This document shows, piece after piece, positions 10,364 to 40,052 of a DNA stretch of 64,000 nucleotides (positions are counted from its first letter, which is position 1; each line of letters opens with the position of its first letter). The stretch covers positions 1 through 64,000 of the forward strand of contig NIVC01003584.1 of the NCBI GenBank assembly GCA_002269645.1. The letters are read 5' to 3'. The translations under genes were made by a program, and so were the position numbers. Below the pieces are notes generated by a model. It worked only from the letters and a program-made list of their open reading frames with translations, ran no database searches and was not told where the DNA came from. This DNA comes from Macrostomum lignano. Its lineage: Eukaryota.

Positions 10364-11186
10364 TCAGCCACGGACAAAGAAGTCGCCGCTGCTTTCGCTG
10401 CTGAAGGCGGCCGGGACCGCAGCATACTCCAGCAGGTGGCACAGGCGCTGCTGCTGGCTGAAGATCACCGCCTGGCAACCGGAACCTTTACTGGAGCACA
10501 GAGACACGCACTGGATCCGACTCGGAGCGCTCACAGTGGTAAAGTTCGGCGCATCAGGGATGCTGAGATCGACGAAGGTCCGGTTGCCGCGAACAAAGAA
10601 GTCGTTACCTTCGATTTGCAATGAAATAATTTGAATTTGAGCGATTCGCCACTAAAAGGCATCTGATTGTCTGCTTAAAAGTTTGTTTGTCTGTCGCCAA
10701 AATCCGATGCAGCAACATACGAAGGCCAAAAATTAAACAAGTGGCCACCAGCAGCAGCAACTCACCGTTGGTGTAGCTCAGCCGGAGCACCCGGTTTCGC
10801 CAGTCGCCTCCGCAGTTCTGGCCCGAGTTTCCACTGCAGGCATGGGTGCAGTCCAAGTCGGGAGCAACGCCCTGCGACCCGTAGGAGTTGCCGCAGAAGC
10901 ACCATCTCGTGGTTTGCAGAGCCGCGAACTGGAAGCCTCCAAGAGCGCAGACGCTGCTGCACACCTCGCGAGTCATCTGGACGCATTTGATAGAATTATC
11001 TATCTGAGATACCTCGGAGCTGCCGATCCGTGTGAGGCCAATGTTCTTCATGTCACCGACGTCTCTCACGCCATTCGTGCCGTCAACGAAGCAGCCGAGG
11101 TCCGAGATCTGGAACTCCCGGCAGAGAGCGGCGCAGATCAGGCAGCTCAGGATCGGAGCAGTACAGAGAATCCTGCAGAGAGGCAT
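10364..11186 (-). CDS. Secreted signal peptide-WSC-PAN/Apple protein, copy A (exons 11186-10766, 10608-10364)
   Basis: Hydrophobic N-terminus; 8-Cys WSC pattern (GCF.D..MT..C...C..FAALQ...C.CG...C...C.G...CGG..R); phase-1 GTGAGT/AAG intron joins YTN-G-NDFF in frame to a 4-Cys PAN-like exon. Confidence 0.85.
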
Positions 11187-11274
11187 GGCCAGGCTGGGTT
11201 TGTCAGTGTGGCATTAAGCAGAAGATTGCCGAATCTCTGTGCGAGAGGCTAAATAACAGCAGCCTTATTGATGC

Positions 11275-11288
11275 GTTGCCATGGAGAC
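11275..11288 (-). promoter_or_regulatory. RFX X-box-like motif upstream of copy A
   Basis: GTCTCCATGGCAAC fits GTHNYY-AT-RRNAAC; about 90 bp upstream of the ATG. Confidence 0.5.
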
Positions 11289-11667
11289 TCTCAGAAGGCA
11301 GCCGCTTGCCTATCGGTAAACAGAGCTGTCAGCGCGGCGTGAGCCGGATTGAAATCCATCAGCTCCATGCATTAACTCGCTCTTGCCCTTAGCCAGAATC
11401 AGTGAGCTTGGAGACCGTTGAGAGTTTCGATTTGCTTTCTGTCGTTGTCGCATCGAGACTGCGGCAGCTGAGCACAGCTGCATGAGCACCCATAGATATC
11501 TGTTTTCAGCTGCACAGGTGGCAACGAAGCCATTAGCCTACCGTGTGTCTGCGTCAATAAATGAATTTGAGTTTTAACCCACAGCCCTCCGTGACTAAAA
11601 AGATGAGAAGCAAATGTCGGCCGTACTGAATAAGACAGACTGAAGCCACCTCTTTAGGCCCATTAGT

Positions 11668-11935
11668 TATCTATCTATCTATCTATCTATCTATCTATCT
11701 ATCTATCTATCTATCTATCTATCTATCTATCTATCTATCTATCTATCTATCTATCTATCTATCTATCTATCTATCGATCTATCTATCTATCTATCTATCT
11801 ATCTATCTTTCTATCTATCTATCTATCTATCTATCTATCTATCTATCTATCTATCTATCTATCTATCTATCTATCTATCTATCTATCTATCTATCTATCT
11901 ATCTATCTATCTATCTATCTATCTATCTATCTATC
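11668..11935. repeat. (ATCT)n microsatellite
   Basis: Direct reading. Confidence 0.98.
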
Positions 11936-12306
11936 GTCGGAAAGTCATGAAAAGAATTTTGCCCCAGGCCTGGAGCCCCTCAAAGCCAGTGAGTCCCAAG
12001 GCACGCGCAGCGGGACTCAACTGTCTAATTATTGATGCTGGCAGGGAACTGAAGCCAGCACGGAAGCAGCAGTCAAGTGATAAACCTGTCTAACTGCTCT
12101 CTTTCCAACGAGGAACTACAGGTCTTGGAAAAAGGGAAAAACTTTGTACCGGCCCCATTGCTGATGGGATCCGACATCCTTCGTGACTCCATCACCACCT
12201 TCAAGCAGAGAATTGCTCTCAACTCTCTTCAACTCAAGTGAAGCGCTTCCGCAAGTGCGGCGTCTTCCAAACTTCCAGACTCATCCAAGCGTCTTCCGAA
12301 CTGCCC
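11936..12306 (+). mobile_element. Penelope-like retroelement fragment
   Basis: Frame at about 12083-12240 reads NLSNCSLSNEELQVLEKGKNFVPAP, matching the NLS...L...E..L.KG..F.P.P motif that precedes the RT in Penelope-like elements. Confidence 0.55.
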
Positions 12307-37488: not shown

Positions 37489-38640
37489 GAAGGCAGAAAT
37501 GACCAGGTGGGGCTGGGAAGAAGGGTGCGGCACCCTCAGCCTGAGCTGGCCTCGTTGATGTGCAGGTAGCTTGGGGTGTTTAAAGGGGTGCGAGGGCCGC
37601 TAGTCACTGCACATGTCACAACCAGTCTCAACCAAAAACCTCCGAGCTCAGGTAGCCACGGATATCCGCCTGTGGCTCATGAACTACTTATCGGATGAGC
37701 TGCTGCCCCAGCTGCGCCGCCTCATCAACACCCTGGTGAGCCGGGCGGAGTCGGAGACCGGCGTGCTCATGCCGGGCTACACCCACCTGCAGCGGGCCCA
37801 GCCGGTGCGCTGGTCCCATTGGCTGCTCAGCTACGCCTCCATGCTGCGCAGGGACTGCCAGAGACTGGCCGACTGCCGGGCCCGCACCGCCGTGTGCCCG
37901 CTGGGCAGCGGCGCCCTGGCCGGCAACCCCTTCGAGGTGGACAGGCAGGCGCTGGCCGGTACGGCGAGGGAATCGGAGCTGGGGAATCGGGGGTTGGGGA
38001 ATTCGGGTGTGGGGAATTAATGCGTGTGGAATTGGGAAGAGGAAGTATTGTCTTTAATTCTTAGATTCGAGAAAAGGTATTCCTAGAATCGTGAACAGGT
38101 ATTCCTGGAATCGTGAACAGGTATTCCTAGAATCGTGAACAGGTATTTTTTAGAATCGTTACCAGGTATTCCTAGAATCGTGAGCAGGTATTCTTAGAAT
38201 CGTGAGCAGGTATTCTTAGAATCGAGAACAGGTATTCCTGGAATCTTGAACAGGTATTCCTGGAATCCTGAACAGGTATTCCTGGAATAGTGAACAGTTA
38301 TTCTTAGATTCGCGAACAGGTATTCCTAGAATCATGAACAGGTATTGTTACAATCGTGAACAGGTATTCCTGGAATCGTGAACAGGTATTCCTGGAATCG
38401 TGAACAGGTATTCCTAGAATCGTGAGCAGGTATTGTTACAATCGTGAACAGGTATTCCTGGAATCGTGAAAAGGTATTCCTGGAATTGTGAACAGGTTTT
38501 CCTGGAATCGTGAACAGGTATTCCTGGAATCGTGGACAGGTATTCCTGGAATCGTGAACAGGTATTCCTGGAATTGTGGACAGGTATTTCTGGAATTGTG
38601 GACAGGTATTTCTGGAATCGTTGACAGGTATTCTTAGAAT
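37489..38640 (+). pseudogene. ASL: ASL fragment, copy 3 (exon-1 remnant, exon 2 at 37652-37958, part of intron 2)
   Basis: VATDIRLWL...[10 protein letters not shown] exon; same 5' junction as copy 2; ends in the 22-bp array. Confidence 0.9.
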
Positions 38641-39117
38641 CGCGGGAACCTGCCTCTTCGTGACGTTTCGTTAAAAATTGCTTTATTATGCATTCAGTTA
38701 AGCAACAGCAGTGTGCAGTGATTGAATGCTTCCTAAATTTGCCTTAACCAGTCCCCAGCCCTTTTGGCTAAAGAAAATTCGTTTCTCATTTATCCAGAAA
38801 AAAATTACAGATTCAAAACGGCTTGAGTCTGTTTTATTCATCATCACCGCTAGCTGCTTCACGCAAGCAGACGGTGGGCCTGATCGCTTCGGCGCCTCCT
38901 GCGCAGCCGAAAAAATATCTTGATTTGAGCTCATGCATCTGCGAGCAGTTGCATGCTCGATGTGACAGTGACAGAAAGCAAATCGAGACTCCCATAATCG
39001 CACAGCTCACTGATTCTTAATAACCACACAAGGCGTTAATATAGATTTCAATCTGGCTCACGCGGCTGCGACAGAGCTCTGTTTACCGATAGGCAAGCGG
39101 CTGCCTGCTGATCGAGA

Positions 39118-39131
39118 GTCTCCATGGCAAC
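39118..39131 (+). promoter_or_regulatory. X-box-like motif upstream of copy F
   Basis: GTCTCCATGGCAAC, about 93 bp before the ATG at 39224. Confidence 0.5.
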
Positions 39132-39223
39132 GCATCAATAAGGCTGCTGTTATTTAGCCTCTCTCTCGCACAGAGATTCGGCAATCTTCTGCTTAATGCC
39201 GCACTGACAAACCCAGCCTGGCC

Positions 39224-40052
39224 ATGCCTCTCTACAGGATTCTCTGTACTGCTCCGATCCTGAGCTGCCTGATCTGCGCCGCTCTCTGCCGGGAGTTCCA
39301 GATCTCGGACCTCGGCTGCTTCGTTGACTACACAAATGGCGTGCAGAGAGACGTTGGTGGCATGAAGAACATTGGCCTCACACGGATCGGCAGCTCCGAG
39401 GTATCTCAGATATACGATTCTATCAACTGCGGCCAGATGACTCGCGAGGTGTGCAGCAGCGTCTGCGCTCTGGGCGGCTTCCAGTTCGCGGCTCTGCAAT
39501 CGACATACTGGTGCTTCTGCGGCAACTCCTACGGGTCGCAGGGCGCTGCTCCTGACTCGGACTGCTTTCTTGCCTGCAGTGGAAACTCGGGCCAGAACTG
39601 CGGAGGTGATTGGCGAAACCGGGTGCTCCGGCTGAGCTACACCAACGGTGAGTTGCTGCTGCTGGTGGCCACTTGTTTAATTTTTGGCCTTCGTATGTTG
39701 CTGCATTGGATTTTGGCGACAGACAAACAAACTTTTAAGCAGACAATCAGATGCCTTTCAGTGGCTCAACTCAACTCAACTTCAAATTATTTCATTGCAA
39801 ATCGAAGGTAATGACTTCTTTGTTCGCGGCAACCGGAATTTCGTCGAACTCAACATCCCTGATGCGCCGAACTTTACGACTGTGAGCGCTCCGAGTCGGA
39901 TCCAGTGCGTGTCTCTGTGCTCCAGTAAAGGCTCCGGTTGCCAGGCGGTGATCTTCAGTCAGCAGCAGCGCCTGTGCCACCTGCTGGAGTATGCTGCGGT
40001 CCCGGCCGCCTTCAGCAGCGAAAGCAGCGGCGACTTCTTTGTCCGTGGCTGA
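39224..40052 (+). CDS. Secreted WSC-PAN protein, copy F (exons 39224-39647, 39808-40052)
   Basis: Same structure; 160-bp intron; in-frame join. Confidence 0.85.

What the first reader, a model, noticed from the sequence alone, without database searches (positions are those of the whole stretch)
10364..40052. Amplified family of secreted WSC-PAN proteins with hypervariable WSC loops (candidate diversifying recognition system)
Seen: five intact two-exon genes. Copies C and F differ at 2 of 160 intron positions and 1 residue of the PAN exon, but at 16 residues plus a 1-aa indel in exon 1. Changes cluster in four windows between invariant Cys residues: after SQI/SPI (DNSIKC, YDSINC, NDASGAFVGSY, DYAIHC); LQxxxW (TTR, AAY, AIY, ASY, STY); APxxxCxxxC (DLD-THA, YWE-SDT, DSD-FLA, YWE-NYA); and GGxW (D, M, N, S). 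Many are multi-nucleotide non-synonymous changes. Established: WSC domains are carbohydrate-binding-type modules and PAN/Apple domains mediate protein or glycan interactions. Inference: diversifying selection on a ligand-binding surface with a constant PAN module, as in invertebrate variable lectin or immune families. I do not know this architecture as a described family.
Basis: partly seen in the sequence, partly recalled or inferred. Interest (0 to 1): 0.8.

Follow-up and report, generated by a model that had tools for sequence, protein, structure and literature searches.

The report
Mosaic secreted WSC–PAN gene cluster
A 30-kb stretch of a Macrostomum flatworm genome holds five intact copies and one fragment of a small secreted WSC–PAN (lectin-like) gene whose surface loops differ sharply because short loop-coding segments are old and swapped between copies by gene conversion, with no measurable excess of amino-acid-changing mutations.

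Summary
Five intact two-exon genes (signal peptide + WSC | phase-1 intron | PAN; 221-226 aa) and one exon-1 fragment lie at 10364-40052. Amino-acid differences pile up in four short windows between invariant cysteines. Pfam, PDB sequence search and a pLDDT-80 AlphaFold model confirm both domains. The family is not new to databases: at least 40 unstudied Macrostomum lignano protein clusters share the architecture, intron position and clustered layout.

The diversifying-selection reading is only partly supported. A standard M1a/M2a test is significant, but the windows carry 7-9 times more substitutions of every kind, synonymous included. With their own rate their omega is 0.55-0.72, and 1.1-1.25 (not significantly different from 1) for the 11 most variable codons. 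That model fits far better (AIC 1870 vs 1943).

The C/F contrast is largely a recombination boundary. Exon 1 is a mosaic (PHI p<=0.0004): C and E share YWE, D and F share DSDCFLA, and B and D are identical over 197 nt.

By homology to yeast Wsc1, the windows lie in loops L2, L4 and L5 at one end of the fold.

There is no evidence for an immune role. The M. lignano orthogroup is annotated testis/germline.

Verdict: a real, moderately interesting cassette-shuffling lectin-like family.

The parts
10364..11186 (-). Copy A. Exon 1 (signal peptide + WSC) 10766-11186, intron 10609-10765, exon 2 (PAN) 10364-10608. Variable windows: w1 10977-11006, w2 10905-10916, w3 10839-10868, w4 10824-10826 and 10803-10808.
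12307..12707 (-). Copy B, an exon-1-only fragment inside ORF 12234-12746 with no PAN exon. It is identical to D over CDS nt 135-331, which includes w1 and w2. After that it follows the 'YTGSSEDA' subtype seen in M. lignano P0001. It marks a conversion tract shared with D (donor or recipient).
15533..16358 (-). Copy C. Exon 1 15938-16358, exon 2 15533-15777. Windows: w1 16149-16178, w2 16077-16088, w3 16011-16040, w4 15996-15998 and 15975-15980.
28883..29716 (+). Copy D. Exon 1 28883-29318, exon 2 29472-29716. Windows: w1 29063-29107 (carries a 15-nt insertion), w2 29168-29179, w3 29216-29245, w4 29258-29260 and 29276-29281.
34755..35584 (-). Copy E. Exon 1 35164-35584, exon 2 34755-34999. Windows: w1 35375-35404, w2 35303-35314, w3 35237-35266, w4 35222-35224 and 35201-35206.
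39224..40052 (+). Copy F. Exon 1 39224-39647, exon 2 39808-40052. Windows: w1 39407-39436, w2 39497-39508, w3 39545-39574, w4 39587-39589 and 39605-39610.
11187..11331 (-). Proximal upstream block of about 145 nt (promoter and 5'UTR candidate) of copy A. Equivalent blocks lie at about 16359-16503 (C), 28738-28882 (D), 35585-35729 (E) and 39079-39223 (F). They differ by only 0-3.6% between any two copies, although far-upstream DNA differs by up to 26%.
27061..29780 (+). D-side arm of an inverted segmental duplication whose other arm carries E. Flank 27061-27850 differs from the E arm at 9 of 788 positions (1.1%). Exon 1 within the same arms differs by about 10% plus a 15-nt indel.
34692..36931 (-). 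E-side arm of the D/E inverted duplication.

Best explanation
This is a cluster from a multigene family so far seen only in Macrostomum. The genes encode small secreted proteins: signal peptide, one WSC domain (a lectin-type variant of the PAN fold), and one PAN/Apple domain. The family evolves by duplication, inversion and frequent exchange between copies (gene conversion or unequal crossing-over).

Exchange, together with purifying selection, keeps the proximal promoter, the signal peptide, the cysteine scaffold of WSC and the C-terminal half of PAN almost uniform. Four short segments of 3-45 nt do not follow this pattern. They encode loops L2, L4 and L5 of the WSC fold. They persist as old, highly diverged 'cassettes', different at synonymous as well as non-synonymous sites, and are re-assorted among copies.

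The result is a set of proteins with one constant module (PAN plus the WSC core) and combinatorially different loop sets, which by homology sit at one end of the WSC domain. These positions are enriched in aromatic and acidic residues, as expected for a sugar- or protein-binding face.

Shown: the gene models, the domains, the family and its distribution, the mosaicism, and the excess of all substitution types in the windows.

Inferred:
- that the loops form the ligand-binding face;
- that selection favouring diversity, rather than drift, keeps the cassettes from being homogenised;
- that the ligand is an extracellular glycan or glycoprotein, more likely in a reproductive (testis or sperm-related) setting than an immune one.
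For: Gene models and intactness.

Domains: Pfam WSC E=7e-13 and PAN_1 at its threshold. Kremen1 WSC E=1.3e-7 and yeast Wsc1. AlphaFold model pLDDT 80, with Foldseek hits to Kremen1 and Wsc1 (target-normalised TM-score 0.79) and to the HGF N domain (probability 0.99).

Family: every full-length match is M. lignano, with at least 40 clusters. The intron has the same position and phase. Copies are clustered on M. lignano contigs.

Mosaicism:
- Region trees conflict: far upstream groups {A,D,E}, while intron, exon 2 and downstream group {A,C,F} against {D,E}.
- PHI p<=0.0004 for the whole unit and for exon 1 alone. 99 of 210 informative-site pairs are incompatible in exon 1, against 0 of 210 far upstream.
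- B and D are identical for 197 nt across w1 and w2. D and F share w3. C and E share YWE.
- The D/E inverted-repeat arms differ by 1.1% in the flank but about 10% in exon 1.

Rates: windows pS 0.37 and pN 0.29, against 0.058 and 0.037 outside. Rate multiplier 7-9x with omega 0.55-0.72, AIC 1870 vs 1943 for M2a.

Replication: the same hot windows appear in the independent M. lignano pair P0023/P0024 and across the family alignment.

Loop mapping: secondary structure of the model. A gapless, cysteine-anchored alignment to 7PZ2. The published description that L1, L2, L4 and L5 cover one end of the domain, and the positions of aromatic clusters 2 and 3 (PMC9024836). Aromatic residues 20% vs 9% and acidic 21% vs 6% at variable codons.

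Functionality: only in-frame indels, PAN omega about 0.4, and no sign of positive selection in exon 2.

Expression lead: Mlig012529.g1 and Mlig011376.g1 (P0006, P0023) belong to OG0000005, annotated 'Testis' and germline_FACS.
Against: - No direct evidence that selection maintains the diversity. Omega in the windows is not above 1, so neutral loops combined with concerted evolution of the rest would give much the same pattern.
- The windows were defined after seeing the data. There are only five sequences. My codon models are my own implementation and assume a single tree, although recombination is demonstrated.
- No model coordinates were available, so 'one surface' rests on homology to a published structure description, not on measurement.
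- Expression of these particular genes is unknown. One family member, Mlig000498.g4, has very low, non-specific counts.
- The window genes are only about 40% identical to the two members placed in OG0000005, and their own orthogroup was not determined.
Confidence: 0.55

Rival explanations
1. Neutral version of the same mechanism. The windows are simply unconstrained surface loops. They keep old divergence because conversion tracts tend to end at mismatched sequence, while the rest of the exon is homogenised and under purifying selection. No selection for diversity and no special recognition role is needed.
For: Omega in the windows is 0.55-0.72 and does not differ from 1. Synonymous divergence is raised together with non-synonymous. 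Conversion is demonstrated.
Against: Window divergence (pS 0.37, pN 0.29) exceeds that of the linked intron (mean pairwise 0.16). It exceeds the D/E flank (1.1%) by far. Conversion tracts demonstrably cross windows (the 197-nt B/D tract), so mismatch barriers are not absolute. All indels are in frame and all five copies are intact. The same codons are hot in an independent M. lignano pair, and the variable positions are enriched in aromatic and acidic residues.
Confidence: 0.3
2. One reading: classical diversifying (positive) selection on point mutations in a ligand-binding surface of an immune-type variable lectin family.
For: M1a vs M2a LRT 12.2-21.2 (p 2e-3 to 2.5e-5) on three topologies, with sites 99, 120, 121, 134 (and 68, 75) in the omega>1 class; exon 2 is not significant. 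Five codons carry four different residues among five copies.
Against: The signal disappears once the windows are given their own overall rate, and that model fits much better. Recombination, which inflates such tests, is demonstrated. Synonymous changes sit directly beside the hypervariable codons (codons 97, 115, 133), which suggests block replacement. No immune expression data exist, and the orthogroup annotation is testis/germline with no other tissue-specific class.
Confidence: 0.12
3. These are prostate-gland seminal fluid proteins. Many M. lignano prostate-limited transcripts carry WSC domains, and such proteins evolve fast under sexual conflict.
For: More than 20 of 76 prostate-limited transcripts have WSC-domain top hits, and two hit oyster 'Plasminogen', a PAN-bearing protein (PMC5977470 Table S1). 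Mlig-pro46 shows WSCD2 homology (PMC6953679). RNA815_80.4 has two WSC domains and a prostate phenotype (PMC4490696).
Against: OG0000005, which holds family members P0006 and P0023, has positional classes Non-Specific, Other and Testes, and no Tail class. The one Mlig-pro46 primer searched, the forward one, has no match in the window even with three mismatches. No sequence link to any Mlig-pro transcript could be made.
Confidence: 0.1
4. The copies are decaying pseudogenes or an assembly artefact with no function.
For: Copy B is a truncated fragment. The cluster lies among transposons and minisatellites. One M. lignano member has almost no reads.
Against: Five of five full copies keep the ATG, both splice sites, the reading frame and all 12 scaffold cysteines. 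Indels are only 3 and 15 nt. PAN omega is about 0.4 and scaffold omega about 0.4. The roughly 145-nt upstream block is conserved.
Confidence: 0.03

Closest known systems
Unstudied Macrostomum lignano 'WSC domain-containing proteins' (for example A0A1I8G8W0, A0A1I8I3M0, BOX15_Mlig012529g1, BOX15_Mlig016881g1); OrthoFinder group OG0000005 of Brand et al. 2020
   Same: Same architecture (signal peptide, WSC, PAN) at 205-220 aa. Same phase-1 intron between the domains. Same C-terminal motif CQAVIFSxQQRLCHLL...GDFFVRG. Clustered, mixed-strand genomic arrangement. Variation in the same loops.
   Different: The window copies are 36-68% identical to the annotated members, and none is present as an exact sequence. 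None of these proteins has been studied. The orthogroup of the window copies themselves was not determined.
WSC domains of human Kremen1 (PDB 5FWS) and yeast Wsc1 (PDB 7PZ2)
   Same: Eight-cysteine pattern, CGG motif and fold: one helix pinned to strand beta-4 by two disulfides, with a long L5 loop.
   Different: Those are single-copy transmembrane receptors or sensors, not secreted multicopy proteins, and no loop hypervariability is reported for them. Kremen1 WSC contacts the protein Dkk1. Wsc1 uses surface aromatic clusters.
PAN/Apple N-domain of HGF and plasminogen; apicomplexan apple-domain lectins (SML-2, MIC4)
   Same: The exon-2 module matches PAN_1 and the HGF N-domain fold.
   Different: It is a short four-cysteine version. 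The Pfam score only just reaches the gathering threshold (21.6-22.0 vs 21.4).
Oyster sperm bindin (F-lectin repeats); abalone lysin/VERL (comparison from my own knowledge, not tested here)
   Same: A secreted lectin-type reproductive protein whose binding-face residues are hypervariable. For oyster bindin, recombination adds to the diversity. The testis/germline annotation of the M. lignano orthogroup makes this the nearest analogue in how it might work.
   Different: Different fold. In bindin the diversity is mainly allelic and by repeat number or splicing at one locus, and dN/dS above 1 is documented. Here the diversity is between paralogues and omega is not above 1.
MHC class I/II, KIR and plant NLR clusters; invertebrate variable lectin or immune families such as snail FREPs, amphioxus VCBPs and sea-urchin 185/333 (from my own knowledge)
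   Same: Multigene clusters in which inter-locus gene conversion shuffles short polymorphic motifs in the ligand-contacting part, while the framework stays uniform. Synonymous divergence is raised around the selected sites.
   Different: No immune link, no somatic diversification evidence, no population data and a different scaffold here.
Cone-snail toxin genes (from my own knowledge)
   Same: Near-identical signal-peptide and upstream sequence, joined to a highly diverged mature region with an invariant cysteine frame.
   Different: Conotoxins show dN/dS well above 1. Here both substitution classes are raised, and mosaicism dominates.

Membership tests
WSC domain (Pfam PF01822) | Profile match above the curated threshold | tested here: met
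   49.1 and 53.6 bits against a cutoff of 27.8.
WSC domain (Pfam PF01822) | Eight conserved cysteines forming four disulfides, plus the CGG motif | tested here: met
   C32, C76, C80, C96, C98, C113, C117 and C125-G-G in copy A. C76 to C125 align without gaps to Wsc1 C49, C53, C69, C71, C86, C90 and C98. C32 lies outside that alignment and is matched to Wsc1 C27 by position only. Disulfide formation itself was not tested.
WSC domain (Pfam PF01822) | Fold of solved WSC domains | tested here: met
   Foldseek hits: Kremen1 E=7e-7; Wsc1 7PZ2 target-normalised TM-score 0.78-0.79, rmsd 2.8 A. Model pLDDT is 87-97 in the core.
WSC domain (Pfam PF01822) | Carbohydrate binding | not testable with these tools
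   Needs recombinant protein and glycan arrays.
PAN/Apple domain (Pfam PF00024) | Profile match above the curated threshold | tested here: met
   21.6 and 22.0 bits against a cutoff of 21.4. This is marginal and covers only profile positions 16-57 of 76.
PAN/Apple domain (Pfam PF00024) | PAN core fold with two conserved disulfides | tested here: met
   Four cysteines (C174, C178, C185, C197). Foldseek probability 0.97-0.99 to the HGF N domain. Model pLDDT 77-92.
Macrostomum SP-WSC-PAN family (M. lignano OG0000005 and relatives) | Architecture, length, C-terminal motif, and a phase-1 intron between the domains | tested here: met
Macrostomum SP-WSC-PAN family (M. lignano OG0000005 and relatives) | Placement of the window genes themselves in OG0000005 | not tested
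   Only P0006 (Mlig012529.g1) and P0023 (Mlig011376.g1), about 40% identical to the window genes, are listed there. The orthogroup of the closest relatives (P0001-type) is unknown.
Diversifying-selection recognition families (immune-type variable lectins) | dN/dS above 1 at the variable sites | tested here: not met
   Omega is 0.55-0.72 in the windows and 1.1-1.25 (not significant) at the 11 ascertained codons when local rate is allowed. M2a is significant only under a single synonymous rate.
Diversifying-selection recognition families (immune-type variable lectins) | Variable residues form one exposed ligand-binding surface | tested here: inconclusive
   The windows fall in loops and turns of the model. 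They map to L2, L4 and L5 and next to aromatic clusters 2 and 3 of Wsc1. No coordinates were returned, so exposure and contiguity were not measured.
Diversifying-selection recognition families (immune-type variable lectins) | Expression in immune tissue or induction by microbes | not testable with these tools
   The only expression annotation found for the family is testis/germline.
M. lignano prostate-limited seminal fluid protein candidates (Mlig-pro set) | Prostate (tail) limited expression | tested here: not met
   At orthogroup level only: OG0000005 has no Tail class. The window genes themselves were not assayed.
M. lignano prostate-limited seminal fluid protein candidates (Mlig-pro set) | Sequence identity to a named Mlig-pro transcript | tested here: inconclusive
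   The Mlig-pro46 forward primer is absent from the window.

The most novel reading that the evidence does not exclude
A germline 'cassette library'. Dozens of WSC-PAN paralogues exchange loop-coding micro-segments of 10-200 nt by short-tract gene conversion. Each worm then carries a combinatorial panel of WSC binding faces on a constant PAN handle. Selection favours this diversity for gamete, sperm-tract or self/non-self recognition in a hermaphrodite. WSC would be a new scaffold for variable recognition molecules.
Probability: 0.2. Interest if true: 0.75.

Novelty: new variant of a known kind. Interest (0 to 1): 0.5.

Why it matters
If selection does maintain the loop diversity, WSC would join immunoglobulin, LRR, fibrinogen-related and F-lectin folds as a scaffold used for variable recognition. 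It would do so in a hermaphroditic flatworm already used as a model for sexual selection. The family is one of the largest orthogroups in Macrostomum transcriptomes and has never been examined.

Methodologically, the case is a clear example of a standard site-model test (M2a) reporting 'positive selection' when the real signal is local rate heterogeneity combined with gene conversion.

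Tried and rejected
- Exact look-up of the five spliced proteins found none in the collection.
- Contig look-ups for UniRef-only relatives (P0001, P0008, P0069) found nothing on record. 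DNA-level replication was therefore limited to M. lignano loci L001 and L002.
- The Mlig-pro46 forward RNAi primer has no match in the window.
- A full-text search for six Mlig gene IDs found no paper. The supplements of PMC10786194 are not held.
- The first AlphaFold run, with 21 sequences, was unusable (pLDDT 58). The second, with 63 sequences, was good, but no coordinates are returned, so surface clustering could not be measured.
- I searched for short donor fragments (13-mers from every window variant) outside the six copies and found none.
- An Rfam scan found no RNA genes.
- The Logan contig L003 (P0105, SRR24204725) looks genomic, with exon 1 followed by a GT donor, so it says nothing about expression.
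- I considered and dropped the prostate seminal-fluid reading for this subfamily once the orthogroup annotation showed no Tail class.

Full report
OBSERVATION. The region holds five complete copies of one gene and one fragment. Six-frame ORFs, a self-BLAST and a multiple alignment of the units give the same model for each complete copy. Exon 1 is 421-436 nt, with a G|GTGAGT donor. The phase-1 intron is 153-164 nt and ends ...CGAAG. Exon 2 is 245 nt and runs to a TGA. The products are 221-226 aa. Coordinates are listed under 'parts'. Copy B (12307-12707) is about 400 nt of exon 1 with no PAN exon, and tblastn finds nothing else in the 64 kb. Every listed motif is present. Eleven exon-1 codons carry three or four different residues among five sequences.

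WHAT THE PROTEINS ARE. Pfam finds WSC (E 7e-13 and 3e-14) and PAN_1 just above its threshold. The WSC part matches Kremen1 (5FWS, E 1.3e-7) and yeast Wsc1 (7PZ2) by sequence. With a 63-sequence alignment AlphaFold gives pLDDT 80, and 87-97 in the WSC core. Foldseek returns Kremen1, Wsc1 (target-normalised TM-score 0.79) and the HGF N domain (probability 0.99). The N-terminus (MPLCR + ILCTAPILSCLICAALC) looks like a signal peptide, by inspection only.

THE FAMILY. All hits that cover both domains come from Macrostomum lignano. There are at least 40 clusters of about 205-220 aa, named only 'WSC domain-containing protein', plus some fused gene models. Outside Macrostomum only the WSC half matches. 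The window proteins are absent as exact sequences, and their best identities are 59-82%. The source is therefore a Macrostomum, either M. lignano or a close relative. In M. lignano the intron sits at the same place and phase. Copies are also clustered there, with at least five copies or fragments on both strands in 20 kb of L001 and a tandem pair in L002.

HOW THE COPIES DIFFER ALONG THE UNIT.
- The last roughly 145 nt upstream and the signal peptide are nearly identical in all copies (upstream 0-3.6%; signal peptide 0-7.6%, copy C being the outlier).
- Mature exon 1 differs by 7-12% in every pair, a star-like pattern.
- Intron, exon 2 and downstream DNA group {A,C,F} against {D,E}. The intron differs by 1-6% within groups and 22-24% between them.
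- Far-upstream DNA groups {A,D,E} against C and F.
Their near-identity begins only at the intron, so the contrast is largely a recombination boundary.

MOSAICISM. Among 21 parsimony-informative sites in exon 1 there are seven different bipartitions of five sequences; one tree allows two. In exon 1, 99 of 210 site pairs are incompatible, against 0 of 210 far upstream. The PHI test gives p<=0.0004 for the whole unit and for exon 1 alone. Specific shared tracts are as follows.
- B and D are identical over CDS nt 135-331, which includes the 15-nt insertion, w1 and w2. They diverge after that.
- D and F share w3 (DSDCFLA).
- C and E share PYWEC, with the same codons.
- C and F share w1.
- The same motifs recur in M. 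lignano proteins of another subtype: PYWEC in P0002 and P0005, SDSECNLA in P0001, AIY in P0069, and DYAI in P0005.
D and E are the two arms of an inverted duplication. Their flank differs at 9 of 788 positions (1.1%), while exon 1 inside the arms differs by about 10% plus a 15-nt indel.

SELECTION TESTS. No PAML was available, so I wrote Goldman-Yang codon models (F3x4 codon frequencies, tree pruning, maximum likelihood). NG86 gives whole-exon-1 dN/dS of 0.4-1.2 and exon-2 values of 0.1-0.67. M1a against M2a on exon 1 is significant on the three best topologies. The LRT is 21.2, 12.2 and 19.1, omega2 is 3.7 or higher, and sites 99, 120, 121, 134 (plus 68 and 75) fall in the omega>1 class. Exon 2 gives an LRT of 0.39.

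That signal does not survive a check on synonymous change. Inside the windows (32 codons) pooled pS is 0.37 and pN 0.29. Outside them the values are 0.058 and 0.037. Counting only codon pairs that encode the same residue, 17.3% differ in the windows against 4.3% outside. Pure synonymous changes sit directly beside hypervariable codons, at codons 97, 115 and 133. Fitted separately, the windows have omega 0.55-0.62 and a tree length of 3.6-3.8 substitutions per codon, against 0.29-0.35 elsewhere. A model with shared relative branch lengths, a window rate multiplier and two omegas gives a multiplier of 8-9 and omega_window about 0.6. Its AIC is 1870, against 1943 for M2a. Masking D in w1, dropping w1 altogether, or using only the 11 hypervariable codons gives omega 0.56-0.72 for the first two and 1.1-1.25 for the last. 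None of these differs from 1.

Because the windows were chosen for amino-acid variability, omega_window is if anything overestimated. Caveats: five sequences, post-hoc windows, and a single-tree model despite demonstrated recombination.

WHAT STILL NEEDS EXPLAINING. Synonymous divergence in the non-window part of exon 1 (about 0.06) is well below that of the intron (mean pairwise 0.16). Window divergence is about twice the intron's, and some thirty times that of the D/E flank. So the scaffold-coding DNA is homogenised, while the windows hold old or imported sequence. Conversion tracts do cross windows (B/D), so the persistence of many cassettes is not simply a mismatch barrier. It is compatible with selection favouring diversity but does not prove it. 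The M. lignano tandem pair P0023/P0024 shows the same hot spots at w2, w3 and w4, with WSC pN/pS 0.54 and PAN 0.16.

WHERE THE WINDOWS SIT. In the model they are loops or turns. w1 is residues 61-70, just before the helix at 73-82. w2 (residues 91-94) has its variable residues 92-94 at the turn between strands 87-91 and 95-99. w3 is residues 107-116, around C113. w4 is residues 121 and 127-128, around the CGG motif. The gapless alignment to 7PZ2 gives Wsc1 residue = copy A residue - 27. Variable residues 92-94 then correspond to N65-S67 (L4, next to Y64). F/H97 corresponds to Y70. Residues 114-116 correspond to N87-Y89, residue 121 to S94 and residue 128 to E101. w1 lies before the aligned stretch; by its position just ahead of the helix it would fall in L2, near Y41 and W43. 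The Wsc1 structure paper states that L5, together with L1, L2 and L4, covers one end of the domain. It also reports that surface aromatic cluster 3 (Y41, W43, Y89, F91, Y93) is not conserved among WSC domains, and that cluster 2 comprises Y64, Y70 and Y104 (PMC9024836). By homology, then, the windows lie together at one end of the fold, on or beside two surface aromatic patches. Variable codons are enriched in aromatic residues (20% vs 9%) and acidic residues (21% vs 6%) (the sequences are not independent). No coordinates were available, so exposure and contiguity were not measured.

FUNCTION AND EXPRESSION. WSC domains are prominent among M. lignano prostate-limited seminal-fluid candidates, which at first suggested that role. 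However, Mlig012529.g1 (P0006) and Mlig011376.g1 (P0023) belong to OG0000005 of Brand et al. 2020. That group has 92 genes in M. lignano, M. hystrix and M. spirale, and none in M. pusillum. Its positional classes are Non-Specific, Other and Testes, giving the final label 'Testis'. It is also labelled germline_FACS, has a mean protein divergence of 0.92, and has no Tail class. One member, Mlig000498.g4 (630 nt), has only 2-12 reads per body region. The only expression evidence for the family therefore points, weakly, to the male germline, and not to the prostate or to immunity. For the window genes themselves this is an inference.

COMPARISON AND NOVELTY. The domains are ordinary members of WSC and PAN, and the gene family already exists in databases, unstudied. 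Loop-coding motifs shuffled among clustered paralogues on a homogenised framework is a pattern known from MHC, KIR and NLR clusters and from invertebrate lectin families. The conserved signal region joined to a diverged mature region recalls conotoxins. The nearest analogue in how it might work, given a testis link, is oyster sperm bindin. These comparisons come from my own knowledge. What is new is the scaffold (WSC-PAN), the organism, and the clear case of window-limited excess of all substitution types.

VERDICT. I rate it a new variant of a known kind, with interest 0.5.

Noticed in passing
window 2330-8387 (-): A run of long ORFs includes a type-B DNA polymerase of the organellar/viral kind (3222-4625; Pfam DNA_pol_B_2 with a weak Endonuclease_7 match) and an rve integrase (6616-7650). 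This combination is typical of a Maverick/Polinton-type DNA transposon.
   Followed up: partly
window 20154-23187 (+): A gag-like (DUF1759) plus reverse-transcriptase ORF of 830 aa, apparently a BEL/Pao-type retrotransposon fragment. It runs into a short-period tandem repeat that translates as (SQSV)n, and no integrase follows.
   Followed up: partly
window 23202-24895 (-), 37613-38020 (+), 43598-45658: Three partial copies of argininosuccinate lyase exons (Lyase_1, ASL_C2). Each sits beside a minisatellite: a 22-nt unit at 23789-24451 and 38057-38642, and another array at about 44332-45072 beside the third copy. They were duplicated along with the WSC-PAN units and mark the segmental duplications that built the cluster.
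   Followed up: partly
window 27061-29780 and 34692-36931: D and E lie tail to tail in an inverted duplication with a spacer of about 4.9 kb. The flank is 98.9% identical, while exon 1 is about 90% identical. D carries a roughly 500-nt insertion that includes (GATA)n at 28280-28439.
   Followed up: yes
introns: A 10609-10765, C 15778-15937, F 39648-39807, D 29319-29471, E 35000-35163: The intron is open in the frame of exon 1 for its whole length in A, C and F, and for about 30 codons in D and E. It would encode a hydrophobic stretch (GELLLLVATCL(I/A/T)(F/S)(G/V)L...). Intron retention would therefore give a WSC protein with a membrane-anchor-like tail in place of PAN. This could be chance.
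   Followed up: no
window w1: A 10977-11006, C 16149-16178, E 35375-35404, F 39407-39436; D 29063-29107: A, C, E and F have a ninth WSC-region cysteine inside variable window 1 (IKC, INC, IHC), giving 13 cysteines after residue 22. D and B lack it (12 cysteines). It could be an unpaired cysteine or pair with C22, depending on where the signal peptide is cut.
   Followed up: no
window 18426-19147 and 41642-42720: Minisatellites with a 16-nt unit (GTGTCTGCCTGTCCCA) produce long spurious Cys/Pro/Ser-rich ORFs in three frames. They are not genes.
   Followed up: partly
window 11668-11935 and 28280-28439 (also upstream of E, around 36100): Long (GATA)n/(TATC)n microsatellites lie 500-750 nt upstream of copies A, D and E, but not upstream of C or F. 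This matches the far-upstream grouping {A,D,E}.
   Followed up: partly
M. lignano protein P0069 (UniRef A0A1I8J9R4, fused model): In this fused gene model a WSC-PAN unit is followed by several repeats that look like a PAN-like segment followed by a fibrinogen-related domain (by eye: 'WAEYKTGFGTYHGNYFVGLEWLH'). This suggests that variable lectin-type genes of two kinds are neighbours in M. lignano. No such genes are in the window.
   Followed up: partly
L001 (M. lignano NIVC01000622.1) 2131-19552: At least five family copies or fragments lie on both strands within 20 kb, including an isolated PAN fragment (2131-2316) and an isolated 5' fragment (12789-12953). These resemble copy B of the window.
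   Followed up: partly
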